From NCBI GenBank assembly GCA_977020255.1, contig CDROCS010000253.1, forward strand, positions 1,798,001 through 1,862,000: 64,000 nt of DNA, given 5' to 3'. Shown here piece after piece: positions 2,655 through 52,206 of the stretch (position 1 is its first letter; each line of letters begins with the position of its first letter). Source of the DNA: Obrimoposthia wandeli. Lineage: Eukaryota. The notes under the pieces are model-generated. The model was given only the letters and a program-made list of their open reading frames with translations. It ran no database searches and was not told the DNA's origin. The position numbers and the translations under genes were made by a program.

Positions 2655-5192
2655 TTATTGTATCGTTAAGGTTATAGGCTGATGTTGCCAAGTAAAAGTG
2701 ACCGTTAAGGTGTTATTTTTATCTTGCCAAAGCGCATTTTTTATCACTTTATTGTTCAAACTAACTGTACTTGGGGCTTGGGTAATATTATGAATAACCA
2801 CAGTCATGCTGCGCTCTTTAGGCATGTTGTTATAACCATTACCACTGCGATTAAGACTGATGCTTAAATGCTCTTGCTGCTTAGCTGAAAAGTGTAGTAA
2901 TTCAAATAAGCCTTTTTCAATCGCTTGATATGTTTTGCCATCATCTTCATACATTTCATAATTAGCAGAAGAGACTGAGCTATCAGCATAATAATGTAAG
3001 GTTAATTTGCTGGCGTCATAATCTTGTGTAGATTGAATATCATCAATCATTGGAATAAACGCACCAGCGCGCACAAGTACTGGCAGAGTTGCTAAACTCG
3101 TTGGTACATTGATGGTTTGATTGCCTTGATACTTTTTAGCGGGTTTATCTTTATTGATAAAGTAATCGAACCAAACACCCGCAGGTAAGTTAACCGCGAC
3201 AGAGCTGACATTAGCTGATACCACTGGCGTTACTAAAAAAGCATCGCCCCACAGGTAACTGCTAGCGTTATCAATAAGTAATGAATTTATATCATCCTCA
3301 AAGAATAGCGGACGCATTAATGGCATACCCGTGGTACTGTTTTGATAGGCTAGGGTGTAGTTGTACGGCAGTAGTTTATAACGGAGTTTTATATATTCTC
3401 GTAAAATATCTTGGGTACGTTTATCATGAAATACCGCTTCAGGTGCTATGTTATCTTGACCGTGAGGACGATAAATTGGCTGAAAAACCCCATATTGTAA
3501 CCAACGAATATACATTTCTTGATCAAATTTATCGCCGCCAGCAAAGCCGCCTAAGTCAGAGTGAGTATAAGCCATACCTAATAAACTCATTTGTAAGCTC
3601 AACTCAACTTGCGGTTTTAGGCCTCCCCAAGAGCGACTAACATCACCGGTCCACGGGATCATGCCATAGCGCTGTGAGCCAGCAAAACCTGAACGCATTA
3701 AAATAAACGGTCGTTGATCAGGGCTCATCTTCAATTGATTCTCAAAAACCATTTTTGCCCATTGATGGCCGTAAACATTATGAATGGCATCAGCATTCAC
3801 AACACTGCCATCGCTGAGGGTATGTAATGTGTCGCTGGGGTGAACTTCAGGCTCACCTAAATCACCCCACCACCCCGTGACGCCTTGCTGATAAAGCTTT
3901 TGGTAAATATTATTAAACCATTGCTGACCTTTATCATTAAAAACATCAACTAAGCCGGTATTACCAAAATAGAAATCAAATTTTTTCGCTTTACCGTGTT
4001 CATCTTTGGCTAAAGCCTCACTCTCAACGGCATCTTGCCATTTACTTGATGTGCTCAGCACAAAAGGTTCAGTGATTAAAATAGTGTTTACACCTTGAGC
4101 TTTAATATCACTGATCATTTTTTCAGGCTCAGGGAAGGCATTTTTATCCCAAGCTAAATTACCCATATGACCTTTAATATCTTTACCAAACCAATATAAA
4201 TCTAAGATCAGGGCATCAAGAGGGAAGTCTAAATCGATAAACTTATTTACCGTGTCGCGTGCTTCTTTTTCATTACGGTAGCCAAAGCGTGAAGCATAAT
4301 TGCCTAAAGACCAACGCGGTGGTAACGGTTGTTTACCGGTAACATCAACATAGTTATTGAGCAGTTTAGGGTAAGTATCAGCAGAAAAAATAATATAAGC
4401 CATGCGACCTGCAACGGCAGAAAACTCAAGGGTATTCTTTTCTTTTTTTGCTAAATCCATATAACCTTTGGCGGAGTTATCAAATAATACTATGTATTTA
4501 TTACTCGACATTACCGCAGGTATAGAGAAGTTCATTTGCTCTGACTGCGTGGTATAGCCGTAATGCGCACGGTTATATAAAGGGAAACTATGACCGCGTC
4601 TATCCATGCCTAATACTCGTTCACCACCACCGAGCAATTTCTCGGTGTCATTTAAGTGAAAGCGAAAACCTTGAACGGCTAAGTTTTTATTGTCTTCAAC
4701 AACGATATCGCTAAAGAAGCCTTGTTGCTCAGCGATGAGTAAAGTGTTTTGTTGTTTTTCGTTTTTCTGGTACTTATTTCTTTGGTACTTGTTTTTCTGG
4801 TAGTAACTAATAGAAAAAGGCGCTTTGTTGATAACCGCACTCAGCTTGTTCAAGGTTAAGGTCAGCTGCTTTTTATCTTCTTTTATAACAAACTTGCTGG
4901 GTAGTGCTTTTTCCTTGATGGCAAAAGAGGGCAGGTGGCTAGCAGGCAATTTTTTAGCTAAATTTTGGTAGTGTGTTGCTATTGCGCCTTCCCCATAAGC
5001 ACTTAAGGTTACTGTCGCTGAATTAGTGTTGATAACAACACTATTTCCCTCTAACTTATGATTTAGGTAATTGCCATTACTTGCCAATGCTAAGGCCAAT
5101 GACGGAGTTGATACGGCTACGCAAGCTAATAAGCTTGTTAATACAACAGTTAATAAATTAGCGCTGAAGTATTTCAATGTGAATAAACGCAA
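2655..5192 (-). CDS. Exported GH31 alpha-glucosidase
   Basis: Signal peptide; ILDLYWF, WWGDLGEPE (nucleophile), WTGDV (acid/base), SDLGGF motifs. Confidence 0.9.
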   Translation of the reverse strand: MRLFTLKYFSANLLTVVLTSLLACVAVSTPSLALALASNGNYLNHKLEGNSVVINTNSATVTLSAYGEGAIATHYQNLAKKLPASHLPSFAIKEKALPSKFVIKEDKKQLTLTLNKLSAVINKAPFSISYYQKNKYQRNKYQKNEKQQNTLLIAEQQGFFSDIVVEDNKNLAVQGFRFHLNDTEKLLGGGERVLGMDRRGHSFPLYNRAHYGYTTQSEQMNFSIPAVMSSNKYIVLFDNSAKGYMDLAKKEKNTLEFSAVAGRMAYIIFSADTYPKLLNNYVDVTGKQPLPPRWSLGNYASRFGYRNEKEARDTVNKFIDLDFPLDALILDLYWFGKDIKGHMGNLAWDKNAFPEPEKMISDIKAQGVNTILITEPFVLSTSSKWQDAVESEALAKDEHGKAKKFDFYFGNTGLVDVFNDKGQQWFNNIYQKLYQQGVTGWWGDLGEPEVHPSDTLHTLSDGSVVNADAIHNVYGHQWAKMVFENQLKMSPDQRPFILMRSGFAGSQRYGMIPWTGDVSRSWGGLKPQVELSLQMSLLGMAYTHSDLGGFAGGDKFDQEMYIRWLQYGVFQPIYRPHGQDNIAPEAVFHDKRTQDILREYIKLRYKLLPYNYTLAYQNSTTGMPLMRPLFFEDDINSLLIDNASSYLWGDAFLVTPVVSANVSSVAVNLPAGVWFDYFINKDKPAKKYQGNQTINVPTSLATLPVLVRAGAFIPMIDDIQSTQDYDASKLTLHYYADSSVSSANYEMYEDDGKTYQAIEKGLFELLHFSAKQQEHLSISLNRSGNGYNNMPKERSMTVVIHNITQAPSTVSLNNKVIKNALWQDKNNTLTVTFTWQHQPITLTIQ
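4761..4803. repeat. 15-bp tandem repeat (about 3 copies) inside the GH31 gene
   Basis: gtttttctggtactt / atttctttggtactt / gtttttctggtag, encoding YQKNKYQRNKYQKN. Confidence 0.8.
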
Positions 5193-5266
5193 AATAATAC
5201 CCTTAAAGTTGAGAAGAATACGAGAGTGTTAATGATAATAACCCTAGTCTAAGGTATGCAGCATCT

Positions 5267-5351
5267 TGAATACGTATGCAAGGCTGACTTCTCATTGAAT
5301 GGCTATTCCATACGTATGCAATTTAGGGAAATTGTTATACATACGTATGCA
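5267..5351. promoter_or_regulatory. Three MalR-like operators in the divergent GH31/GH13 promoter region
   Basis: TGAATACGTATGCA 5267-5280, TCCATACGTATGCA 5307-5320, TACATACGTATGCA 5338-5351. Confidence 0.8.
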
Positions 5352-5472
5352 AAGCCTTTCAGCTAACTTTTTATTTGCGTATTCTTATTTGAAAGAATTA
5401 ATAAATGCTTGTACACCAAGTACTAATAATAACTATCGGTACTTGAACAAGTATCAGTGTTGGGGTTTTCAA

Positions 5473-7101
5473 ATGAATGAACAAATGTGGTGGCGTGGCG
5501 CGGTAATTTATCAAATTTATCCACGTAGCTTCTATGATGCTAATCAGGACGGTATTGGCGACTTGCCAGGGATCATTAGTAAGTTAGATTATATTGCTAG
5601 CTTAGGTATTGATGCTATTTGGATTTCACCTTTTTTCAAATCCCCGATGAAAGATTTTGGTTATGATATCAGCGATTATCGTGATATTGATCCTATCTTT
5701 GGCACGCTAGCTGACTTTGATGAACTTGTCCTTAAAGCCCATGCGCTTGGCATTAAGATTATGATTGACCAAGTGCTTAGTCATACCTCTGATCAGCATC
5801 AATGGTTTATTGATTCACGTGAAGATCACAGTAACGATAAAGCTGACTGGTACGTATGGAGTGATGCCAAAGAAGATGGCACGGCACCTAATAACTGGTT
5901 ATCTATATTTGGCGGAACAGGCTGGACTTGGGAGCCAAGACGTCAACAATATTACCTGCATAACTTTCTAACAAGTCAGCCAGACTTAAATTTCCATAAC
6001 CCCGATGTACGCCAAGCGGTGTTAGACAATATTGAATTTTGGCTTAAACGTGGTGTTGATGGCTTCCGTCTTGATGCGATTAACTTTTGTTATCATGACG
6101 CTCAATTGCGTGATAACCCAGCTAAGCCTAAAGAGTTAAGGCAAAGTATTGGTTTTGATGAAAAAAATCCTTACGCTTATCAATATCATTATTTTAATAA
6201 TACCCAAGATGAAAATCTCGGTTTCATGGAAAATATTCGAAGCTTGCTTGATCAGTACCCAGGCACGGTCGCTTTAGGTGAAATATCTTCAGAAGATTCA
6301 TTAAAAACCATGGCGGAATATACTCAAGGCGAACACCGTTTGCACATGGGTTACAGTTTTGATTTATTAACTGATAATTTCAGTGCTAGTTATATTAAAC
6401 AAGTAGTGCAAAGCCTTGAAGCGCGTGTTTTAGATGGTTGGCCATGTTGGTCAATTTCAAATCACGACGTAGAACGTGTTGTTTCCCGATGGGGCGGCTT
6501 TAATAGTAAAAACTTTGCTAAAATGCTCTTTGCAATGATCTCCTCATTACGCGGCAGTGTTTGTAGTTATCAAGGTGAAGAATTAGGTCTAACCGAAGCT
6601 GATATTGCCTTTGAAGATATTCAGGATCCTTATGGCATAACTTTTTGGCCACAGTTTAAAGGTCGAGACGGTTGCAGAACCCCCCATCCTTGGCAGCATG
6701 ACTCAGCTAATGCTGGCTTTAGTGATGGCAAACCGTGGTTACCGGTATCAAGCGAACACTTTTCTCAATCTGTAGATTTACAAGATGAAGCGATTGATTC
6801 AGTGCTAAATAGCTACCGTCACTTTAACCGCTGGCGCAAAGAACAACCAGCATTACGTTACGGTGATATTAACTTTATTGATACCGCTGAACCCCTATTA
6901 GCTTTTGTTCGTCAATATCAAGGTCAGCAGTTATTAGTCTGTTTTAACTTTAGTGAGCAGAGTCAAAAAGTGGCTTTATCTTCACTTACTCAGCATAGTG
7001 ATAGCATCACCGAATTATTAGGTCATAAGTTAGTCAGCGCAACAATTACTGATGGCGTATTACAACTACCACCTTTTGGCTGTTTTTATAGCAAGCTTTA
7101 A
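5473..7101 (+). CDS. GH13 alpha-glucosidase (oligo-1,6-glucosidase-like)
   Basis: WWRGAVIYQIYPRSF, DGFRLDAIN, GEIS, SNHD. The ORF-track start 5299 runs through the operators; ATG 5473 (MNEQMWW) is the likely start. Confidence 0.92.
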   Translation: MNEQMWWRGAVIYQIYPRSFYDANQDGIGDLPGIISKLDYIASLGIDAIWISPFFKSPMKDFGYDISDYRDIDPIFGTLADFDELVLKAHALGIKIMIDQVLSHTSDQHQWFIDSREDHSNDKADWYVWSDAKEDGTAPNNWLSIFGGTGWTWEPRRQQYYLHNFLTSQPDLNFHNPDVRQAVLDNIEFWLKRGVDGFRLDAINFCYHDAQLRDNPAKPKELRQSIGFDEKNPYAYQYHYFNNTQDENLGFMENIRSLLDQYPGTVALGEISSEDSLKTMAEYTQGEHRLHMGYSFDLLTDNFSASYIKQVVQSLEARVLDGWPCWSISNHDVERVVSRWGGFNSKNFAKMLFAMISSLRGSVCSYQGEELGLTEADIAFEDIQDPYGITFWPQFKGRDGCRTPHPWQHDSANAGFSDGKPWLPVSSEHFSQSVDLQDEAIDSVLNSYRHFNRWRKEQPALRYGDINFIDTAEPLLAFVRQYQGQQLLVCFNFSEQSQKVALSSLTQHSDSITELLGHKLVSATITDGVLQLPPFGCFYSKL

Positions 7102-7194
7102 TACTTTCCTTAGTAAGCAAGGTAAGCAAGTTAATTAGGTGAAGAAATCTAAATCAGTAACTGTAACTACGGTAAACCAATTAAGAGAATCGCT

Positions 7195-9021
7195 ATGAAT
7201 TTTATCAGTAAATGTTCGGTACTCGCTGCAATAAGCTTGGCATGTTTTACCTCACAGCTAAGCCAAGCAAGTGAAGCTAAACTCGCAGTAAAAGTGACGG
7301 GAAAATTAACGGCCAAGGCGGCAACGTTAGCACCTTATCAACAACGTGATTTTCAAGAAGAAGTCTTTTACTTTGTTTTACCGGACCGTTTTCACAATGG
7401 TGATACCAGTAATGATTTAGGCGCTGCAGCGAATGATAAAAAGCGTGCTGTGTCTCGCGGCGGTTTTGATAAAAACCATAAGGGCATGTATCACGGTGGC
7501 GATCTAGCAGGCCTTACGGAAAAACTACCTTACCTTGATAACATGGGCGTAAGTGCCATTTGGTTAACGCCGATACTACGTAATCGCGCTATGCAAGCGG
7601 GAACCTCAGGTTATCATGGTTATTGGATTGTAGACTTCACTGAAATTGACCCGCACCTTGGCAGTAATGCTGAGCTGAAAAATTTTATCGACCAAGCACA
7701 CCAACGTAATATCAAAGTGTTTTTTGACATTATTACTAACCATACTGCTGACGTGATTAAGTATAAAGAATGTCACGGTGAAGACGGTTTAGGTTGGATC
7801 GTTGATGTAACTAAAGGCAATGACTGCCCCTTTATTTCAATGGCGCAACTTGCTCAAGGTAATCATTACAGCCCATTGATTCCTAAAGGTGATGAAACAC
7901 TAAAATATCCAGCATGGCTTAATGATGTCGATGTTTATCACAACCAAGGTGACTCATTTTGGCGAGGCGAAAGCTCAGTGCGTGGAGACTTTGCTGGCCT
8001 TGATGACTTATATACTCAAAAAGCCAGTGTTGTTAATGGCATGATTGATATTTACCAAAAAATCATTGATGAATTTAAGCCTGATGGCTTTCGAATTGAT
8101 ACCGTTAAACATGTCAACATAGAGTTTTGGCAGCAATTCTCACCAGCTTTAATGCAACACGCTAAGACACAAGGACTTGATAACTTTTTCATGTTTGGAG
8201 AGGTTTATAGCTTTGAACCTGAGTTATTGAGTCGCTTTACCACACAAGCGAAAATCCCTTCAGTATTAGACTTTGCTTTTCAAGGCGCGATGACCAAAGC
8301 CTTGGTTGAACAGCAGGGCACTGATGTATTGGCCCAATTATTCGCTAAAGACCATTTTTATCAAACAGAACACAAATATATCGCCAACACTAATGCTAAT
8401 CAGTTAGTTAATTTTACCGGTAATCATGACATGGGCCGTTTTGCTTACGCACTTAAACAAAGTCCTCATCACTATAGCGAACAAGCGCAAATTCAACGTA
8501 ACTTGCTGGCGCATGCGATGATGTTCTTTAGTCGCGGTGTTCCAGTGATTTATTATGGTGACGAACAAGGTTTTGTTGGTGATGGTGGTGATCAAGCTTC
8601 GCGTCAAGATATGATGCCTTCTTTCGTTGCCAGTTATAATGATGATGATTTACTGGCTACAAGTAAAAGCACAGCCGACGATAATTTCGATCCTAACCAT
8701 CTTTTTTATCAAAGTTTTGCTAAGTACGCGCAGTTATATCAGCAATACCCAGCGTTACGCTTTGGTGAGCAGGCGGTGGTATATTCTCAAGACGAAGCCG
8801 GTATTTTTGCCATAACACGTCAAATGAAAGCGACGAGTAAAACCAAGAGACAAAACTTATTGGTGGTATTCAATACCGCGATTAAAGCGCAGCGTTTAAA
8901 TGTATTAGCAGATAAGCTCGGCTTTAATCAAACAGAGAGTAAATTGCTTTATCGTTCAGTCAACGCTGAAAAAACTGATGAAATAGCACCTCTGAGCTTT
9001 GCTATTTATCAATTGAAATAG
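7195..9021 (+). CDS. Secreted GH13 alpha-amylase/cyclomaltodextrinase-like enzyme
   Basis: Signal peptide; FYFVLPDRF, GYHGYW, DGFRIDTVKH, GEVY, NHDMGR. Confidence 0.9.
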   Translation: MNFISKCSVLAAISLACFTSQLSQASEAKLAVKVTGKLTAKAATLAPYQQRDFQEEVFYFVLPDRFHNGDTSNDLGAAANDKKRAVSRGGFDKNHKGMYHGGDLAGLTEKLPYLDNMGVSAIWLTPILRNRAMQAGTSGYHGYWIVDFTEIDPHLGSNAELKNFIDQAHQRNIKVFFDIITNHTADVIKYKECHGEDGLGWIVDVTKGNDCPFISMAQLAQGNHYSPLIPKGDETLKYPAWLNDVDVYHNQGDSFWRGESSVRGDFAGLDDLYTQKASVVNGMIDIYQKIIDEFKPDGFRIDTVKHVNIEFWQQFSPALMQHAKTQGLDNFFMFGEVYSFEPELLSRFTTQAKIPSVLDFAFQGAMTKALVEQQGTDVLAQLFAKDHFYQTEHKYIANTNANQLVNFTGNHDMGRFAYALKQSPHHYSEQAQIQRNLLAHAMMFFSRGVPVIYYGDEQGFVGDGGDQASRQDMMPSFVASYNDDDLLATSKSTADDNFDPNHLFYQSFAKYAQLYQQYPALRFGEQAVVYSQDEAGIFAITRQMKATSKTKRQNLLVVFNTAIKAQRLNVLADKLGFNQTESKLLYRSVNAEKTDEIAPLSFAIYQLK

Positions 9022-9045
9022 CTTGGGTATAAGATAACTAATGAC

Positions 9046-9082
9046 AAAAAGCGGCTTCAATTTATATTGATGCCGCTTTTTT
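9046..9082. terminator. Bidirectional intrinsic terminator
   Basis: aaaaagcggc...gccgcttttt hairpin between convergent amylase and folE genes. Confidence 0.8.
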
Positions 9083-9142
9083 ACTGCGAGTAAAAGTATG
9101 TATGAAGCACACTTTTATTGGCACTGAGGTTGAGTATGTTAC

Positions 9143-9694
9143 TTACGATTTGACCAGCGATAACATTTCTTGTCTCGCAGACGAATTTTTTCTCATTTGT
9201 CCTAACATTACTGATGTTGTCATTGATGAGTTTTGTTTTTCTACACCACGCATCATCATACATAAATGCTGTGCTTCAATGATTACACCTACACCAATAC
9301 AGCCGGTTATCTCTTGAATAGATAAAGCTATTTCTCTGGCTAAGTTTTCTTGAATTTGTAATCGTCTGGCGTACATATCAACAATTCGAGCGAATTTCGA
9401 TAAGCCTAGCACTTTGCCACTAGGTATATAAGCAATATGGCATTTCCCTATAAAAGGCAGCATGTGGTGCTCACACATTGAATACAACTCGATATTTTTT
9501 ACAACAACCATTTCATCTGCATCAGACTCAAATAAAGCACCATTGACTACCTCATCAATGTTTTGTTGATAACCTTGAGTTAAAAACTCCATTGCTTTTG
9601 CTGCGCGCTTAGGTGTATCTATTAAACCATCTCGGTTAATGTCTTCTCCAATAGCAGAAATGATTTCTTTGTAGTTATTTTCCATATTTTTCAT
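9143..9694 (-). CDS. folE: GTP cyclohydrolase I
   Basis: [36 protein letters not shown]. Confidence 0.95.
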
Positions 9695-46473: not shown

Positions 46474-46966
46474 GATAAAGTCAATATAAAGTTACTACTG
46501 AGATAGCGCAATTGTAGCAGGAAAGTATTGAGAAATATTGATGTAGGTAGCAATTTTGTTTACTTAGCATCTGATAATATAATTAAAGCTAATGTGTTGT
46601 TTGAAAATGATTATTTACTGTTTGTGATAATTTGTACTGTTATTAGCAATAACAAACGCTTAACTGATTTTTTTACAGGTAAATAAACCTCTATTGTATT
46701 GGTTTTCCGTTTAAAACATGTTGTTTCAATTTCTTGTTTACTATTTTTCTGGTTTTTTATTGGAATTTATTTCAGTTTATTACCTAAGAATCGCTTGTGT
46801 AAGGCGCATCTTTTGTATTTTCAGTGAGCAGTGGCTTCATGCCATGATTAAGGTAGGGGAATATAACTTACTATCTTCACTAGAAGAGTCTCTGGTATTT
46901 ATATACAATCATATTTCCTATGCATTTTGCATTTTTGTAATAACTTAACGTATCAATGATAATCAT

Positions 46967-47980
46967 ATGGCTGCTATTTTAAATCTAAATAATAAAAACG
47001 AAGCGTTAAGTTATTTGAATGCGTGTCATTGCTTTGGTCGTTCACCAACTAATGTTGATACTGTTATTAATGCTCAGGAAGTTTCCCGTATCCACGCAGT
47101 CGTTGAATGGAGCAATAATCAATGGCTTATTCGAGATCTTAGTAATAATGGTACTTGGGTAAACAATCAAAAATTAGTCAAAAATAACCCGCATAAACTT
47201 AAAGTGGACGATAAAGTATTTTTCGCTTCAGGTGAGAGTCACGGCTTTGCTATACAAGATCTAAGACCGCCACAAAACATGTTATTGCCAATTGGGCAAG
47301 ACGGTGAGCAAGTCACTGCATTGCCAATTATTTTATCGGATGGCAATTTACTTCCCAGCGAAGAAAAACCTGAGGTGGCATTGTTTTATGTGCCGAGTAA
47401 AGACCAATGGTATAAAGAGTTTCTTGTTGATAGCGACGGTAGCGCTTACCCAATGGCAAATTCAGATTTATTATTTTTCAATAACCAAAAGTGGCAGCTA
47501 AAATTAATCCCTTTAACTGAAAATACCGTGTTAATGGCTAAAGCTAAGTTAACGGTTCACCAGATAATGTATCGTTTTAATTTAAGTTTAGATGAAGAAA
47601 ATACTGAATTGACCGTAACAACGGATGATGAAAAATTTTGTTTAGCAAATAAAGCCCATCATTACCTAACGTTGAGTTTGGCTAGGCATCGTGATGAAGA
47701 TGCTAAACAAGGTATTGATGCCGACAATCAAGGCTGGCGCTTACCAGAAACACTAACAAAAGAGTTAGGGTGTGACATCACTTTATTCAACACACATGTT
47801 TGCCGAGCTAAGCAGCAATTTAGAGATATCTTCGATGGCGCTTGCGATGGCGATGAATTAATTGAGCGCAAAGGTAAAAAAATACGCTTTGCTGGTGTTT
47901 TTTATCGTATTTATAAAGGCAGTGAACTGATCGTTAATCGCGGACAAGATAAGGTATCCCTTACGGTATTACATGGATAA
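46967..47980 (+). CDS. FHA-domain protein with a putative C-terminal HTH DNA-binding domain
   Basis: FGRS...VSRIHA...DLSNNGTWVN (FHA); GWRLPETLTKELGCDITLFNTHVCRAKQQF resembles an HTH. Confidence 0.8.
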   Translation: MAAILNLNNKNEALSYLNACHCFGRSPTNVDTVINAQEVSRIHAVVEWSNNQWLIRDLSNNGTWVNNQKLVKNNPHKLKVDDKVFFASGESHGFAIQDLRPPQNMLLPIGQDGEQVTALPIILSDGNLLPSEEKPEVALFYVPSKDQWYKEFLVDSDGSAYPMANSDLLFFNNQKWQLKLIPLTENTVLMAKAKLTVHQIMYRFNLSLDEENTELTVTTDDEKFCLANKAHHYLTLSLARHRDEDAKQGIDADNQGWRLPETLTKELGCDITLFNTHVCRAKQQFRDIFDGACDGDELIERKGKKIRFAGVFYRIYKGSELIVNRGQDKVSLTVLHG

Positions 47981-50696
47981 CAAGTTACCTCATTACAGCC
48001 GTGAAAGATTATTGGGTGAAGGTGGCATGGGTAAAGTTTACCTAGCCCAAGATAACCAATTACAACGACAAGTTGCCATTAAAGAATTAACCTATCAGCC
48101 TAAAGGTGAGACGGTTAATCATGCCCTACAAGAAGCACGTTTATTAGCACGTGTTAACCATTCTAATATTATACAAATTTATAATGTCCATGATGAAGGT
48201 GATCATATCTCCTTGGTCATGGAGTATTTCCATAGTAAAACATTGACTCAGTTTCAACAGGAAACTTACTGCACCCTCATTCAAAAGCTTGATTTATTGC
48301 AACAACTCTCTGCTGGGTTAGCTGCAGCGCATAAAAATAATGTGATTCATTGTGATTTAAAACCAACCAATATATTGGTCAATGAGCAAGGGCAGCTAAA
48401 AATCACCGATTTTGGCATCGCTTTGATAGCAAGTAATGAAAACAGTATTGATACAAAGGTAAGTAATGAATCTTCAGGTAATGGTGAACCTTCAGCAGAT
48501 CATGAGCCAGTGCAATACGGTAGTTTACTTTATATGTCACCGGAGCAAATACAAAAGCACGCGGTAGATTATCGTAGTGATATTTTCTCCTTCGGTATAG
48601 TTGCTTATCAATTAATGGTGGGTAGTCACCCCTTTGGTCGGGGCTCAGCGACAGATATAGCGCAAAGAATATGTGAAAGCACACCAGAGCAGGCTAAAAA
48701 CTTAATGCTAAATGCACCGAGTGCGTTAACTGATTTGTTAATGGAAATGTTAATTCAACCACTTGAGCAAAGAACATTAACGGCGAGTGCCATAGAAAAT
48801 CGGTTAAAGCATATTAGAACGGCGTTAATGCAAGCAGAGATTAGCGAACAAGTGACAATGCCTTTAGGTGAGTTACCTTTGTCTTCTGGTTTAGCTGGCA
48901 TAGGCAGTGATGATACTGCTTCGTATACTCAGCCTATTCAGATAAATAATGCTTTCCAAAATGCTCAAAATATCCAGTCACCTGAAAACCTACAAAGATC
49001 ATGGTTTTCACCTAGTCGCCCAATTGTTGCTAGCATCGCTTTAGTATCTCTGGTGCTGATTCTTTCCTTTTGGTTTAACATCACTAAAGAAGTTGCAACA
49101 AAACAAATTGTTATTTTAAAGCCGACCTTGGCTGATAGCCCATTAATGGCGGCAATGCAGCAAGATTTAGTTATTTCAGCGGTGGAAGATGCTTTGCGAC
49201 AAGCGGTAATAAATACCAAGAATATGTATTTAATCTCGCAGCGAGAAGTAAATGCTATAACCAAAGAATACCCGGATGACCTTAAAAGGCTTAAGCAAGC
49301 GGTTGGTGCTTCAGACATTATTTCAACGTCACTAGAGTGTGATAATAGCCGTTGTAAAGTAAGCTTTTCACGTTTAGTGGCTAATAATAACAATAACAAG
49401 TTAATCGTAAAATCCGAGAGAAATTGGTTAGCACCGATAGATAAATTTAATGTTATTTTTAGTACCAGCCAAACACAATTCGCTTCACTTTTTCCAGAGC
49501 ACTCAGAAATCAATCAATCAGGCCTAGTGCAGCGCCCTATTAATGAAGAGGATTATCGTGAATACATAGCGCTTTATAGCCAAATTAAAGGTCATGGTAA
49601 TTATAGTGCAGAGAGTTTGACTCAATTAGAAGCACTGTTAACACGCTCGCCTTATTTATATGCTGGTTATGGTTTATTCCGCGAAACCGCTTCAAATTTA
49701 TATACAGATACCCGTGATAAAGGTCACCTCGAACGACTTGAATTAATACTACAAAAGTCGCCACCTGAATATCGTTATAGTTTTTACCACGCGATAGATA
49801 GTTTTTTTGTAGCGTATAAAATTAAAGAGCTTGATATTGCGCAGCAACAAATAATAGAAGCTAAAAATAGAGGTGCTAGTAGTTTTGTTTTAAGTGATCT
49901 TAATGCAATTTTATTTTTTTCCAAAGGCCAATACCAAAAAGCCGCAAATACTTTTGAGCAAGCGATTTCTCTTAGGCCCAGTACAGCGTTACTTTATAAT
50001 CTAGCCTTTAGTTATTGGCGTATGGGCGATTTAGCTAGAGCAGAAAGTTCACTAAATATAATGTTAGAAATTGTCCCTAATAATTATAAAGCAAAACGCT
50101 TACAGGCAAATATTTGGCTTTTGCAAGGGCGTCTTGAATTAGCCATAACAACTTATGAAAAAATTGTAATAAGCTTAAATAATGGCACAGATTTAACCAA
50201 TTTAAGTATGGCTTATGCATTAAATAGGCAATATGATAAGTCGTTAGAGTTTGCCCAAAAGGCGTTAAAACAAAATCCAAAACACCCGTTGAAATTGTTA
50301 AATTTAGCCGATATTGAAATGATACTGGGAGATGAAAAATCAGCAATATTACATTATCAACAGGTAGTAGCTATTTTGGCAGGAAAAAATGAGATTAAGT
50401 CGTTAACATATTTAGCGCAAGCTTATGGCCAGTTAAATCAAGCAACCTTAGCGATAGAAGCTGTAAGTAAAGCGCAATCCCTGGCACCTGGAAGTGGTGA
50501 AGTATCTTATACATCGGCTATTGTTTACAGTTTGCTGAAAGAAGAGACTTCGGCTGTTCATCATGTGAAAGCGGCATTAAAAAATAATGTCGGTGTGGTG
50601 TGGTTTAACCTTCCTTGGTTTGATAATTTATGTGATGACGAAGAGTTTGACCTGTTAATGGTGAAATACGATAATAAAAAACGTTGTAAACCTTAG
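47973..50696 (+). CDS. Hanks-type Ser/Thr kinase, TM helix, then periplasmic alpha/beta and TPR domains
   Basis: GEGGMGKVY, VAIK, HCDLKPTN, DFG, YMSPEQ; TM IVASIALVSLVLILSFWF; multiple TPR-like helices. Confidence 0.92.
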   Translation: MDNKLPHYSRERLLGEGGMGKVYLAQDNQLQRQVAIKELTYQPKGETVNHALQEARLLARVNHSNIIQIYNVHDEGDHISLVMEYFHSKTLTQFQQETYCTLIQKLDLLQQLSAGLAAAHKNNVIHCDLKPTNILVNEQGQLKITDFGIALIASNENSIDTKVSNESSGNGEPSADHEPVQYGSLLYMSPEQIQKHAVDYRSDIFSFGIVAYQLMVGSHPFGRGSATDIAQRICESTPEQAKNLMLNAPSALTDLLMEMLIQPLEQRTLTASAIENRLKHIRTALMQAEISEQVTMPLGELPLSSGLAGIGSDDTASYTQPIQINNAFQNAQNIQSPENLQRSWFSPSRPIVASIALVSLVLILSFWFNITKEVATKQIVILKPTLADSPLMAAMQQDLVISAVEDALRQAVINTKNMYLISQREVNAITKEYPDDLKRLKQAVGASDIISTSLECDNSRCKVSFSRLVANNNNNKLIVKSERNWLAPIDKFNVIFSTSQTQFASLFPEHSEINQSGLVQRPINEEDYREYIALYSQIKGHGNYSAESLTQLEALLTRSPYLYAGYGLFRETASNLYTDTRDKGHLERLELILQKSPPEYRYSFYHAIDSFFVAYKIKELDIAQQQIIEAKNRGASSFVLSDLNAILFFSKGQYQKAANTFEQAISLRPSTALLYNLAFSYWRMGDLARAESSLNIMLEIVPNNYKAKRLQANIWLLQGRLELAITTYEKIVISLNNGTDLTNLSMAYALNRQYDKSLEFAQKALKQNPKHPLKLLNLADIEMILGDEKSAILHYQQVVAILAGKNEIKSLTYLAQAYGQLNQATLAIEAVSKAQSLAPGSGEVSYTSAIVYSLLKEETSAVHHVKAALKNNVGVVWFNLPWFDNLCDDEEFDLLMVKYDNKKRCKP

Positions 50697-50698
50697 TT

Positions 50699-51070
50699 TT
50701 ATTGCATTATATCGCCATCATGAATAGCTCCAAAAGTTGAATACACCGGCTCTTCTACTGTTAATTCTTGCGTTGTTTCAGCATTCTTAATCGTTACTAA
50801 TTTCTCAAATATCGCAGGGTTTGACTCAGCTAAATTTAACAATTTTTCTAGCTGAACAGCGTCTGAATCTGCCAGTTTCAATAATTGATTGAGTAGTTTT
50901 GGATCTGTTAAGGCAATGTCATTTAACCGTTCAACGAGAACAGGGTTAGTTTCTGCAATAGTGATTAGCATGTGAGTAGAGCTAGTAGTGCTAGCTGCAA
51001 TAGCGCTTGGTAAATAAACACTGCTAGTTAAGGCCAGTACTATAGATAAAACTTTAATATATTTGTTCAT
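50699..51070 (-). CDS. Small secreted protein with four 14-aa repeats
   Basis: Signal peptide MNKYIKVLSIVLALTSSVYLPSAIA; SD AGGAA upstream; stop 2 bp from the kinase stop. Confidence 0.8.
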   Translation of the reverse strand: MNKYIKVLSIVLALTSSVYLPSAIAASTTSSTHMLITIAETNPVLVERLNDIALTDPKLLNQLLKLADSDAVQLEKLLNLAESNPAIFEKLVTIKNAETTQELTVEEPVYSTFGAIHDGDIMQ

Positions 51071-51532
51071 GACATTATTTCCTGTTGAGTTTTGTGATGT
51101 ATGTTGTGTATGTAAAGTGATTTATGTTGATAAGGGGGTAGTTCCCTTCAAAGCTGGATGTAAATTTATAGACTTGGTGCTCCTTAAACCATGACAACCA
51201 ATTACAGTCTATTTAATCTTGTTGTTTATTTTGTTTTTTACTATTTCCCCTTCTAATAAGTTGTTGTTAAATAATTGCTTGTTGTGTTTTTTTATTTTTA
51301 TCAATCATTACGTTTTAAAATTACTTAAATTTAATTTTCGTAAGGTAGTGTCATCTTATTGCACAATCACCCTAAAAATTGCACTTTTGTCACAGCTTTT
51401 TTTATCGATGTCATCGCTTTTGTAATGGCGTGTAATGTCCTTTGATATTTAATTATGGGATAGTTAATTGAGGCTAAAAATAATAGATCACTCTGAAAAC
51501 ACAATACTTTTTAGATTGAGGAAGACAAAGTA

Positions 51533-51907
51533 ATGCATGCAATGTTATCACTAGACTTAGATTTAAATATTTTTTCAAAGCCAGAGATAAGTGCTGTAAC
51601 GCGTGGATTAAAGGTAATAACTATGAATGATTCGGTGCCATGCAAAAAAGTTCACGCAAGGCAATTAGATGAAAATATGCTTACAAATTTAGCTAAGCAT
51701 CAATTACATGCTAAGGGAGCACACAAGTGTTGTCAATGCGCGTATAACTCAGGATACCAGCAAGGCTCTTTGTTACAAAAATTCATTAGTTTGGATATTG
51801 AAAGTTTGGGTGATGCACAAGTAAATAAAGATGGTAATCAAAAGAGTATTCATCAAGCTTTTGCCTTAGGGTACAGTGATGGCGTTAATTCTTTCATTAG
51901 AAATTAA
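51533..51907 (+). CDS. Hypothetical protein, putative Zn-binding (C-x3-H...HKC-x2-C)
   Basis: ORF with SD GAGGAAG; CKKVH...GAHKCCQCAY. Confidence 0.65.
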   Translation: MHAMLSLDLDLNIFSKPEISAVTRGLKVITMNDSVPCKKVHARQLDENMLTNLAKHQLHAKGAHKCCQCAYNSGYQQGSLLQKFISLDIESLGDAQVNKDGNQKSIHQAFALGYSDGVNSFIRN

Positions 51908-51924
51908 TAACATTTTCGAAATAG

Positions 51925-52206
51925 TTGCTCATACTAAAGGGAACGGACTGCTTTTTGTACCGAGTTTTGCAACTGGAGTTGTACATGAAAAATAGAAAAA
52001 CACTCGTGAGTAAGTCTGGTTTCAATTTGGTTCAAGTCGATGTATTGGATGGAAATGATAACGTAATAAGGACTTCTTACGAGGTGGTCGATCCTGATGA
52101 GGATGCTATAGGTCGTTTTGGCAGTTTAACTGAGGCTCATAATTTTATTAATATGTTATGCCATCTGAACCAGCAAGACCAAGCTATCCCAATAGGTAAA
52201 GGATAA
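51925..52206 (+). CDS. Small hypothetical protein (likely start 51985, MKNRK)
   Basis: SD GGAG before the ATG of MKNRK; followed by a terminator. Confidence 0.6.
   Translation: MLILKGTDCFLYRVLQLELYMKNRKTLVSKSGFNLVQVDVLDGNDNVIRTSYEVVDPDEDAIGRFGSLTEAHNFINMLCHLNQQDQAIPIGKG

What the first reader, a model, noticed from the sequence alone, without database searches (positions are those of the whole stretch)
46967..51070. Candidate peptide-sensing system: FHA regulator, non-RD receptor kinase with TPR ectodomain, and convergent secreted pro-peptide
Seen: the FHA-HTH gene overlaps the kinase gene by 8 bp. The kinase has one TM helix and a large extracytoplasmic TPR region. A 123-aa secreted protein is encoded tail-to-tail with stops 2 bp apart and ends in a short unstructured tail (EEPVYSTFGAIHDGDIMQ). 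Established: FHA domains bind pThr, and TPR domains bind short peptides in Gram-positive Rap/Phr and RRNPP signalling. Inference: the secreted protein or its C-terminal peptide is the ligand, the kinase autophosphorylates and recruits or phosphorylates the FHA regulator, and transcription changes. This would be a eukaryote-like, possibly quorum-type circuit in a marine Gram-negative; I know of no description of this trio.
Basis: partly seen in the sequence, partly recalled or inferred. Interest (0 to 1): 0.8.

Follow-up and report, generated by a model that had tools for sequence, protein, structure and literature searches.

The report
Receptor kinase module controlling a secreted peptide
A marine Colwellia bacterium carries a conserved three-gene unit, a membrane Ser/Thr kinase with a periplasmic TPR sensor, an FHA-plus-winged-helix regulator and a gene for an exported short Gly-rich peptide, in which the regulator appears to switch on the peptide gene; this is a testable candidate for peptide signalling in a Gram-negative bacterium.

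Summary
In detail: all three ORFs, the 8-bp overlap, the 2-bp tail-to-tail gap, the HCD (non-RD) kinase, one TM helix, the periplasmic TPR region, a Sec signal peptide and a conserved C-terminal tail.

New evidence:
- The regulator's C-terminal domain has an OmpR/PhoB-type winged-helix fold.
- A direct repeat, TGTAAT-N4-TGTMAT, marks loci of this regulator family across genera. It lies about where a -35 element would sit upstream of the small gene, so the small gene is the regulator's predicted direct target.
- The trio stays together in four different genomic contexts.
- In two genomes and one metagenome contig the 123-aa protein is replaced by shorter exported precursors. They keep the signal peptide and carry 1.5 to 4 tandem copies of the tail motif, joined at K/R. 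The tail is therefore the functional unit.
- Sister modules carry an unrelated cytoplasmic DP-EP-like gene at the same position, usually with the same repeat.

That the peptide is the kinase's own ligand is not shown. Complex prediction gave no answer, and no covariation with the TPR domain was found. I put it at about one in three.

This scan flagged the paralogous module elsewhere in the same genome (s1-224271).

Verdict: a real module, and a new variant of kinase plus FHA-regulator signalling.

The parts
46895..46911 (+). Conserved promoter-region element of the FHA-kinase operon. It contains a palindrome (TTGTAT-N4-ATACAA in most relatives; one mismatch in the window).
   Evidence: Near-invariant block in the alignment of 18 upstream regions; unique in the window. 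It does not contain the TGTAAT direct repeat.
46967..47980 (+). Regulator gene (337 aa): FHA domain (aa 1-100), small beta domain (aa ~105-180), OmpR/PhoB-type winged helix (aa ~195-325).
   Evidence: Pfam FHA 60.2 bits. Model pLDDT 87. FHA fold Z 15.8 to EmbR. The C-domain model's top 17 VIA matches are all OmpR-family DNA-binding domains, Z 9.6-7.4. Family-wide invariant or near-invariant FHA positions include G24, R25, H43, N61 and G62, and helix-3 positions N275, R280 and Q284 are near-invariant.
47973..50696 (+). Receptor Ser/Thr kinase (907 aa): kinase domain aa 8-274 (HCD), juxtamembrane linker, TM ~350-371, periplasmic N-domain aa ~380-560 with a Cys pair, TPR region aa ~617-872, C-terminal Cys pair.
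   Evidence: Catalytic residues are invariant. C456 and C461 are invariant, and C887 and C905 are near-invariant.
48855..48866 (+). Juxtamembrane T295-M-P-L: candidate phospho-Thr docking site for the FHA domain (pT+3 = Leu/Ile).
   Evidence: T-x-x-[LI] is kept in 23 of 24 kinases, including relatives at 29-38% identity. Its role is inferred from the known pTxx[I/L] preference of FHA domains.
50699..51070 (-). Gene for a Sec-exported 123-aa precursor: signal peptide aa 1-26, acidic helical repeat domain aa ~32-94, variable linker, conserved tail.
50702..50740 (-). Tail motif (aa 111-123), core G-x-I-x-D-G-G-I-I-R: the unit that is tandemly repeated in the variant precursors of related genomes.
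   Evidence: Conservation profile. L087 has 4 copies of an 11-residue unit with a 33-bp DNA period at 94% matches. L088 has 2 copies. P0178 has 1.5 copies.
51165..51170 (-). -10-like hexamer (TATAAA) of the small gene's promoter, 20 nt downstream of the repeat. No -35 consensus is present.
   Evidence: Six of seven bases of a C-N2-TAAATT block are invariant at a fixed distance from the repeat in 18 loci. The sigma-70 consensus scan reports no promoter there.
51189..51207 (-). Proximal operator: direct repeat TGTAAT-N4-TGTCAT with a 10-bp period, about where a -35 element of the small gene's promoter would sit.
   Evidence: Strongly conserved across the 18 aligned upstream regions; an exact repeat match in 15 of the 17 related loci. 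Unique in the window. Kept with one base changed per half-site (CGTAAT, CGTCAT) in the tandem-repeat variants.
51421..51436 (+). Distal operator TGTAAT-N4-TGTAAT facing orf124, 216-230 bp from the proximal site.
   Evidence: The spacing between the two sites is kept even where the divergent gene differs (L021, L024).
51533..52206 (+). orf124 and orf93: two conserved genes with no family match, divergent from the small gene; candidate co-regulated operon.
   Evidence: Present in the core Colwellia loci and not detected in L021, L024, L025, L091, L093 and L094. No Pfam or NCBIfam family.

Best explanation
This is a three-gene signalling module of the Colwellia group.

Shown:
- An intact single-pass Hanks-type kinase carries a large periplasmic sensor (a Cys-containing N-domain followed by TPR repeats).
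- The gene whose end overlaps the kinase start by 8 bp encodes an FHA domain joined to an OmpR/PhoB-type winged helix.
- A direct repeat TGTAAT-N4-TGTMAT is concentrated at loci of this regulator family. It lies about where a -35 element of the convergent small gene's promoter would sit, and again about 230 bp upstream, facing orf124.
- The small gene encodes a Sec-exported precursor. Its conserved unit is a Gly-rich tail of about 11 residues, which occurs in 1.5 to 4 tandem copies in variant precursors.

Inferred:
- A periplasmic signal activates the kinase, which autophosphorylates the conserved juxtamembrane T295-x-P-L.
- The regulator's FHA domain docks there, or the regulator is itself phosphorylated.
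- The winged helix then binds the repeat and activates the peptide gene and orf124-orf93.
- The precursor is exported, and the tail is released or exposed as the active peptide.

Whether that peptide returns to the module's own TPR sensor (autoinduction) is open. I put it at roughly one in three.
For: Domains and fold.

Active-site and Cys conservation. Conserved T295-x-x-[LI] in 23 of 24 kinases.

Operator:
- Strongly conserved in 18 aligned upstream regions.
- Only 10 exact sites in a 5.2-Mb Colwellia genome (reversed-pattern control: 6). Four of the 10 lie in its two FHA-kinase loci.
- 26 sites in 15 of 20 loci of distant family members, against 0-2 for reversed, re-spaced or scrambled patterns.
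- The same repeat lies upstream of the convergent DP-EP-like gene in four of the six sister loci checked.

Linkage:
- The small gene is adjacent to the kinase in 17 of 17 loci found with the small protein.
- A motif-bearing exported precursor sits at the convergent spot in 11 of 11 complete loci found with the regulator.
- The trio is intact in four different flank contexts.

Peptide unit.
Against: - There are no expression, phosphorylation or DNA-binding data, and no RNA runs hold the locus.
- The winged helix has no sequence-level family hit. Foldseek gave nothing at E <= 0.001. The assignment rests on VIA Z scores of 8-9.6, which are moderate.
- The repeat resembles a Pho box, so another OmpR-family protein could bind it.
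- In the 123-aa form no basic residue precedes the tail, so release of a free peptide there is uncertain.
- The FHA-kinase operon's own promoter in this clade lacks the repeat.
Confidence: 0.55

Rival explanations
1. Closed autoinduction loop. The exported tail peptide binds the kinase's own periplasmic TPR domain. The kinase then activates the FHA-winged-helix regulator, which induces more peptide. This would be a quorum-type circuit.
For: - The peptide gene is the predicted target of the regulator and is never separated from the receptor.
- Multi-copy precursors indicate a diffusible peptide.
- The TPR domain and the precursor both diverge about twice as fast as the kinase domain and the regulator: 34% and 42% against 18%. 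Pheromone-receptor pairs often behave this way.
- From general knowledge, TPR domains commonly bind short peptides.
Against: - No covariation between precursor and TPR remains once phylogeny is controlled (partial r 0.065, p 0.28).
- The lineage that switched peptide type has a kinase that is more diverged in all domains, not specifically in TPR, and it is a single lineage.
- Sister modules with homologous sensors pair with a cytoplasmic protein, so the ancestral sensor had another ligand.
Confidence: 0.3
2. The full-length 123-aa helical protein acts in the periplasm as a feedback modulator of the sensor. CpxP plays this role for CpxA: a small helical periplasmic protein, induced by the pathway's own OmpR-family regulator, that damps the sensor.
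For: - The mature protein is predicted to be exported, acidic and helical.
- Its gene is the predicted target of the pathway's regulator.
- The helical domain is well conserved in 76 sequences.
Against: - The helical domain is dispensable. Two genomes and one metagenome contig keep only the signal peptide plus tail repeats at the same position.
Confidence: 0.08
3. The linkage is positional only. The repeat is bound by another OmpR-family response regulator such as PhoB, and the small gene is functionally unrelated to the kinase and the FHA protein.
For: - The half-site resembles the Pho-box half-site CTGTCAT (from memory).
- Most of the 17 loci share genus-level synteny, which alone would keep the genes adjacent.
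Against: - The repeat has a 10-bp period, not the 11 bp of a Pho box.
- Genome-wide, 4 of only 10 exact sites lie in the two FHA-kinase loci.
- The repeat travels with FHA-winged-helix genes across genera and gene contexts, including loci without any kinase.
- The trio is kept in four unrelated flank contexts.
Confidence: 0.07

Closest known systems
PknH-EmbR of Mycobacterium tuberculosis (receptor Ser/Thr kinase plus FHA-containing OmpR-type transcription factor)
   Same: A membrane Hanks-type kinase with an extracytoplasmic sensor signals to a regulator that combines an FHA domain with an OmpR/PhoB-type winged helix. EmbR is the top FHA structural match (Z 15.8), and its DNA-binding domain also matches the C-domain (Z 6.3).
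   Different: The domain order is reversed (FHA first, winged helix last). There is no BTAD domain; a small beta domain stands in its place. The host is Gram-negative, the sensor is a TPR region, and the two genes overlap. A conserved operator and a peptide-precursor target are specific to this family.
PknS of Xanthomonas citri (transmembrane Hanks kinase with periplasmic TPRs; PMC13147305)
   Same: A Gram-negative receptor kinase with an N-terminal cytoplasmic kinase domain, one TM helix and a periplasmic TPR region needed for signalling. Its ligand is unknown.
   Different: PknS acts by phosphorylating an ECF sigma factor (EcfK). No FHA regulator and no adjacent peptide gene are described for it.
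Sec-exported Phr-type pro-peptides and multi-copy peptide precursors such as yeast alpha-factor (from general knowledge)
   Same: A signal peptide, a variable spacer and a short conserved C-terminal peptide. In the variants the peptide unit is tandemly repeated and the units are joined at basic residues.
   Different: Phr peptides are re-imported and sensed by cytoplasmic TPR proteins (RRNPP). Here the TPR is periplasmic and fused to a kinase. No processing protease or released peptide has been shown.
CpxA-CpxR-CpxP envelope stress circuit
   Same: An OmpR-family regulator induces an adjacent gene for a small helical periplasmic protein.
   Different: Cpx uses a histidine kinase and an Asp-phosphorylated receiver. 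The helical domain here is dispensable in the tandem-repeat variants.

Membership tests
FHA domain (PF00498) | Profile match above the curated cut-off | tested here: met
   60.2 bits against a cut-off of 20.7, residues 23-84.
FHA domain (PF00498) | Phospho-Thr-binding residues (Gly-Arg, Ser-x-x-His, Asn-Gly) and the 11-strand sandwich fold | tested here: met
   G24, H43, N61 and G62 are invariant and R25 is near-invariant in 38 family members; the Ser of S-R-x-H is the majority residue. Fold Z 15.8, rmsd 1.6 A over 92 residues to the EmbR FHA domain.
Hanks-type Ser/Thr protein kinase (PF00069) | Profile match and catalytic Lys, Glu, Asp, Asn and DFG Asp | tested here: met
   174.3 bits. K37, E54, D128, N133 and D146 are invariant in 24 sequences.
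RD kinases | Arg immediately before the catalytic Asp (HRD) | tested here: not met
HCD in the window and in 22 of 24 aligned kinases; HRD in L058 and HKD in L060.
OmpR/PhoB-type winged helix (Trans_reg_C) | Sequence profile match | tested here: not met
   No Pfam or NCBIfam hit to the C-terminal half at E <= 0.1. A profile search of PDB sequences gave only E about 1 to lambda Cro helix-turn-helix.
OmpR/PhoB-type winged helix (Trans_reg_C) | Fold: N-terminal beta sheet, three helices, C-terminal hairpin wing | tested here: met
   C-domain model pLDDT 87.6. The top 17 of 48,161 chains are all OmpR-family DNA-binding domains (BaeR Z 9.6, GlnR 9.2, VicR 8.8, ToxR 8.4, CadC 8.0), covering residues 9-125 of 146. 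Foldseek alone found nothing at E <= 0.001.
OmpR/PhoB-type winged helix (Trans_reg_C) | Binds direct repeats spaced about one helical turn apart | tested here: inconclusive
   A 10-bp-period direct repeat co-occurs with the family. Binding itself cannot be tested with these tools.
EmbR / SARP family | Bacterial transcriptional activation domain (BTAD) between winged helix and FHA | tested here: not met
   No BTAD match, and the domain order is reversed. It works like EmbR but is not a member.
RRNPP / Rap-Phr peptide sensing | Cytoplasmic TPR receptor that binds a re-imported peptide | tested here: not met
   The TPR region lies C-terminal to the single TM helix and has conserved Cys pairs, so it is periplasmic. 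It is fused to a kinase.
RRNPP / Rap-Phr peptide sensing | Sec-exported precursor with a short conserved C-terminal peptide | tested here: met
   Signal peptide, variable linker and conserved tail; tandem-unit variants. Release of the peptide is not testable here.
Pho box / PhoB regulon | CTGTCAT repeats with an 11-bp period upstream of phosphate-regulon genes | tested here: not met
   The period is 10 bp; patterns with 3-, 5- or 6-nt spacers are not enriched. Four of 10 genome-wide sites lie in the two FHA-kinase loci. The Pho-box consensus is recalled from memory.
DP-EP family (PF08985), for the partner gene in sister modules | Profile match above the cut-off | tested here: not met
   Best 18.8 bits against a cut-off of 25, so only a remote resemblance. 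There is no homology to the 123-aa protein (hhalign probability 0.09%).

The most novel reading that the evidence does not exclude
A Gram-negative bacterium uses a linear, Sec-exported, unmodified peptide as an autoinducer. In some species the peptide is cut from a multi-copy precursor. It would be sensed in the periplasm by the TPR ectodomain of a non-RD Hanks-type receptor kinase. The signal would pass through phospho-Thr and FHA docking to a winged-helix regulator that re-induces the peptide gene. In layout this is a receptor-kinase/peptide circuit like those of plants, and it would be a new class of bacterial quorum sensing.
Probability: 0.3. Interest if true: 0.88.

Novelty: new variant of a known kind. 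Interest (0 to 1): 0.7.

Why it matters
Signalling from receptor Ser/Thr kinases to transcription is well worked out in few bacteria, and ligands for periplasmic TPR sensors in Gram-negatives are unknown.

This module offers a complete and compact test case: a sensor, a regulator with a predicted operator, and a defined target gene. Culturable, sequenced Colwellia strains carry it.

If the exported Gly-rich peptide proves to be the kinase's ligand, it would be a peptide-based cell-cell signal in a Gram-negative, a group where acyl-homoserine lactones and other small molecules dominate.

Even if it is not the ligand, two results stand. The operator assigns candidate regulons to an uncharacterised family of FHA-winged-helix regulators. 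That family also sits beside RiPP-type peptide clusters, GGDEF genes and ABC transporters.

Tried and rejected
- Complex prediction of the periplasmic domain (380-907) with the mature small protein scored 0.01, which is 'no answer'. It counts neither for nor against binding.
- Mirror-tree test: distances of the small protein against the TPR domain, controlling for regulator distances in 18 loci, gave partial r 0.065, permutation p 0.28. No covariation was detected, and power is low.
- Test of whether the lineage with tandem-repeat peptides has a specially diverged TPR: all kinase domains are somewhat more diverged and it is one lineage, so the result is uninformative.
- Homology between the small protein and the DP-EP-like partner of sister modules: none.
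- ESM Atlas look-alikes of the small protein: nothing usable, best score 0.75.
- Rfam scan of the window: no hits.
- Public runs: 11 holders, none recorded as RNA, so I did not lay reads.
- Foldseek on the whole regulator returned only FHA matches. The C-domain had to be modelled alone.
- Intrinsic terminator between the kinase and the small gene: none found, and only 2 bp are available.
- GlyGly-CTERM or other C-terminal sorting signal for the tail: rejected, because there is no hydrophobic helix after the motif and the motif occurs in internal tandem copies.
- The first search of relatives failed because the window's assembly is eukaryotic in size. I worked around this through the handles of loci.


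Full report
**Setting**

The window lies on a 4.68-Mb contig (C253) of a 1.35-Gb, 6,912-contig assembly. It is therefore a bacterial chromosome co-assembled with a eukaryote. Every named homologue of the three proteins comes from Colwellia or close relatives.

**Observation**

The overlap is 8 bp and the tail-to-tail gap is 2 bp.
- Pfam finds FHA (60 bits), Pkinase (174 bits) and several TPR families over residues about 617-872.
- The catalytic loop reads HCD. The catalytic Lys, Glu, Asp, Asn and DFG Asp are invariant in 24 aligned kinases, so this is an active non-RD kinase.
- Hydropathy gives a single TM segment at about 345-372. The small protein has an N-terminal signal-like segment ending A-I-A.
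- Conserved Cys pairs after the TM helix (C456/C461, C887/C905) fit a periplasmic location.

**The regulator**

- An AlphaFold model built from 38 homologues (pLDDT 87) shows three domains: FHA, a small beta domain and a C-terminal alpha/beta domain.
- The FHA domain matches EmbR and many others at Z 14-16. Its phospho-Thr-binding residues are conserved.
- The C-terminal domain has no sequence-level family, and Foldseek found nothing at E <= 0.001.
- Modelled alone (pLDDT 87.6) and aligned to 48,161 chains, its 17 best matches are all OmpR/PhoB-type DNA-binding domains: BaeR Z 9.6, GlnR 9.2, VicR 8.8, ToxR 8.4, CadC 8.0. They cover nearly the whole domain.
- The Z values are moderate, but the list is uniform. 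I accept an OmpR-type winged helix at fold level.

**The kinase linker**

In the juxtamembrane linker, T295 followed by Leu or Ile at +3 is kept in 23 of 24 kinases, down to 29% identity. From general knowledge of the domain, pT-x-x-[I/L] is the usual FHA ligand. This is the likeliest docking site, but that is an inference.

**Linkage of the trio**

- A scan of species genomes seeded with the small protein returned 17 loci. All have the kinase and the regulator adjacent.
- Most share genus-level synteny. Three of them (L021, L024, L025) have entirely different flanks and still keep the trio.
- Because that scan was seeded with the small protein, I repeated it from the regulator. Fourteen of 401 family genomes carry this clade. 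Of 11 complete loci, 9 have the 123-aa gene.
- The other two carry a shorter ORF at the same convergent position. Each has a homologous signal peptide, a short acidic spacer and tandem copies of an 11-residue unit: four copies in Colwellia echini and two in another Colwellia.
- The echini array has a 33-bp DNA period at 94% matches.
- A third variant from a metagenome has 1.5 copies in the same gene context.
- The unit aligns with the tail of the 123-aa protein, with the shared core G-x-[IF]-x-x-G-G-[ILV]-[IM]-[KRQ].
- In the 123-aa family the tail is re-conserved after a variable, indel-rich linker.
- The tail is thus the one part retained everywhere, and the helical domain is dispensable. 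This is the architecture of a peptide precursor.

**The operator**

- Aligning 260 bp upstream of the small gene in 18 loci shows a strongly conserved direct repeat, TGTAAT-N4-TGTCAT, with a 10-bp period. It lies 20 nt upstream of a near-invariant -10-like element, and no -35 consensus is present.
- A second copy faces the divergent orf124, at a conserved distance of 216-230 bp.
- In a 5.2-Mb Colwellia genome the pattern has only 10 exact matches, against 6 for the reversed control. Four of the 10 lie in that genome's two FHA-kinase loci.
- In 20 loci fetched around distant regulator homologues (25-38% identity), there are 26 matches in 15 loci. Reversed, re-spaced or scrambled controls give 0-2.
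- The repeat also appears where the regulator has no adjacent kinase.
- The winged helix's third helix is among the most conserved parts of the family.
- Direct repeats one helical turn apart are what OmpR-family domains bind. I therefore read the repeat as this family's operator and the small gene as its direct target. A site over the -35 region without a -35 consensus suggests activation.
- It is not a Pho box: the period is 10 bp rather than 11, and the genome-wide distribution does not fit.

**Sister modules**

- The same contig carries a paralogous pair 530 kb away. Homologous pairs occur in other genera.
- In six of six examined, the convergent gene behind the kinase is a 166-201-aa protein without a signal peptide. 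It ends in S-Q-D-P-x-I-x-x-x-R and has a weak, sub-threshold likeness to DP-EP. It is not homologous to the small protein.
- The same repeat lies upstream of it in four of the six.
- A tree places the window's clade as a long-stemmed, well-supported (100/100) group among these.
- The architecture (regulator, kinase, convergent target with operator) appears to be old. In the Colwellia duplicate a secreted-peptide gene occupies the target position instead of the DP-EP-like gene.
- This supports the view that the small gene is an output. It weakens the argument from mere adjacency that it is the ligand, because the ancestral sensor must have recognised something else.

**Is the peptide the ligand?**

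- Complex prediction gave no answer.
- Distances of the small protein do not track the TPR domain once the regulator's distances are removed.
- The lineage that changed peptide type shows a generally, not specifically, faster kinase.
- For the idea: the TPR domain and the precursor both evolve about twice as fast as the kinase domain and the regulator. In addition, peptide genes placed under the control of an adjacent receptor are very often that receptor's signal (general knowledge).
- I put autoinduction at about 0.3.

**Known systems**

- The nearest working analogue is PknH-EmbR. This protein lacks BTAD and has the reverse domain order, so it is not a member.
- PknS of Xanthomonas shows that periplasmic-TPR Hanks kinases exist in Gram-negatives, but it signals to a sigma factor.
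- Literature searches found no description of this regulator family, its repeat or the peptide.
- An earlier first-stage note of this scan (s1-224271) flagged the paralogous module. I found that module independently and confirmed its parts.

**Verdict**

This is a new variant of Ser/Thr-kinase plus FHA-regulator signalling, with a predicted operator and a secreted-peptide target.

Noticed in passing
whole window; G000 contig C253: The window belongs to a 4.68-Mb contig of Colwellia-like sequence inside a 1.35-Gb, 6,912-contig assembly. A near-complete bacterial chromosome has been co-assembled with a eukaryote, as a symbiont, surface associate or contaminant. Small shares of the stretch's words are also held by runs labelled ice and seawater metagenomes.
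   Followed up: partly
L009 (G000:C253:1262000-1271999), genes at 4921-5490(+), 5498-8299(-), 8301-9353(-): A paralogous module on the same chromosome: FHA-winged-helix regulator, TPR kinase (38% identity) and a convergent cytoplasmic 189-aa DP-EP-like gene. A one-mismatch copy of the repeat lies 162 bp upstream of the regulator.
   Followed up: yes
L057, L061, L072 (other genera): Relatives of the regulator sit beside roughly 1,370-aa kinases. Next to these are genes I read by eye as YcaO/TfuA-like, two small ORFs resembling nitrile-hydratase-type leader peptides, and (next to a 316-aa kinase) a LanC-like gene. None of these ORFs was scanned against a family library. If the readings are right, the family may often control ribosomal-peptide gene clusters.
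   Followed up: no
L063, L064, L066-L069, L074, L075: Other relatives have no adjacent kinase. They follow a gene I read by eye as a GGDEF-type diguanylate cyclase, and some precede an ABC ATPase, an 811-aa permease and a putative lipoprotein gene. The TGTAAT repeat lies upstream of these operons.
   Followed up: partly
window 46895-46911 (+): The FHA-kinase operon's promoter region holds a conserved palindrome, TTGTAT-N4-ATACAA. It resembles the gammaproteobacterial LexA box CTGT-N8-ACAG (recalled from memory) but does not match it. Its binding protein is unknown.
   Followed up: no
window 51533-52206 (+): orf124 (with a C-C-Q-C motif) and orf93 have no family match. They are conserved beside the peptide gene in core Colwellia and are preceded by the distal repeat, so they are probably co-regulated.
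   Followed up: partly
alignment A4, columns about 740-800 (kinase residues about 600-660): Among very close relatives (regulator 92-94% identical) the sensor region falls into two distinct block types. This suggests recombination or rapid diversification of the ectodomain. The three loci with one block type also share a G-D-[IL]-M tail ending, but they are also one another's closest relatives.
   Followed up: partly
L087 4495-4773 (-) and L088 4592-4804 (-): The repeated units begin F-G-G-F (Colwellia echini, which I recall as a sea-urchin gut isolate) and Y-G-G-I. This recalls the F/Y-G-G-F start of animal nociceptin and enkephalins, whose precursors are also multi-copy and cut at basic residues (from memory). 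It is most likely chance in a short Gly-rich motif. It was not tested.
   Followed up: no
L081 (G001:C46:137916-140931), site at 1501-1516: One of the six other exact repeat sites in the Colwellia reference genome lies 160 bp upstream of two adjacent genes that look by eye like TIR-domain genes (not scanned). Four of those six sites are intergenic, so the regulon may extend beyond the two modules.
   Followed up: partly
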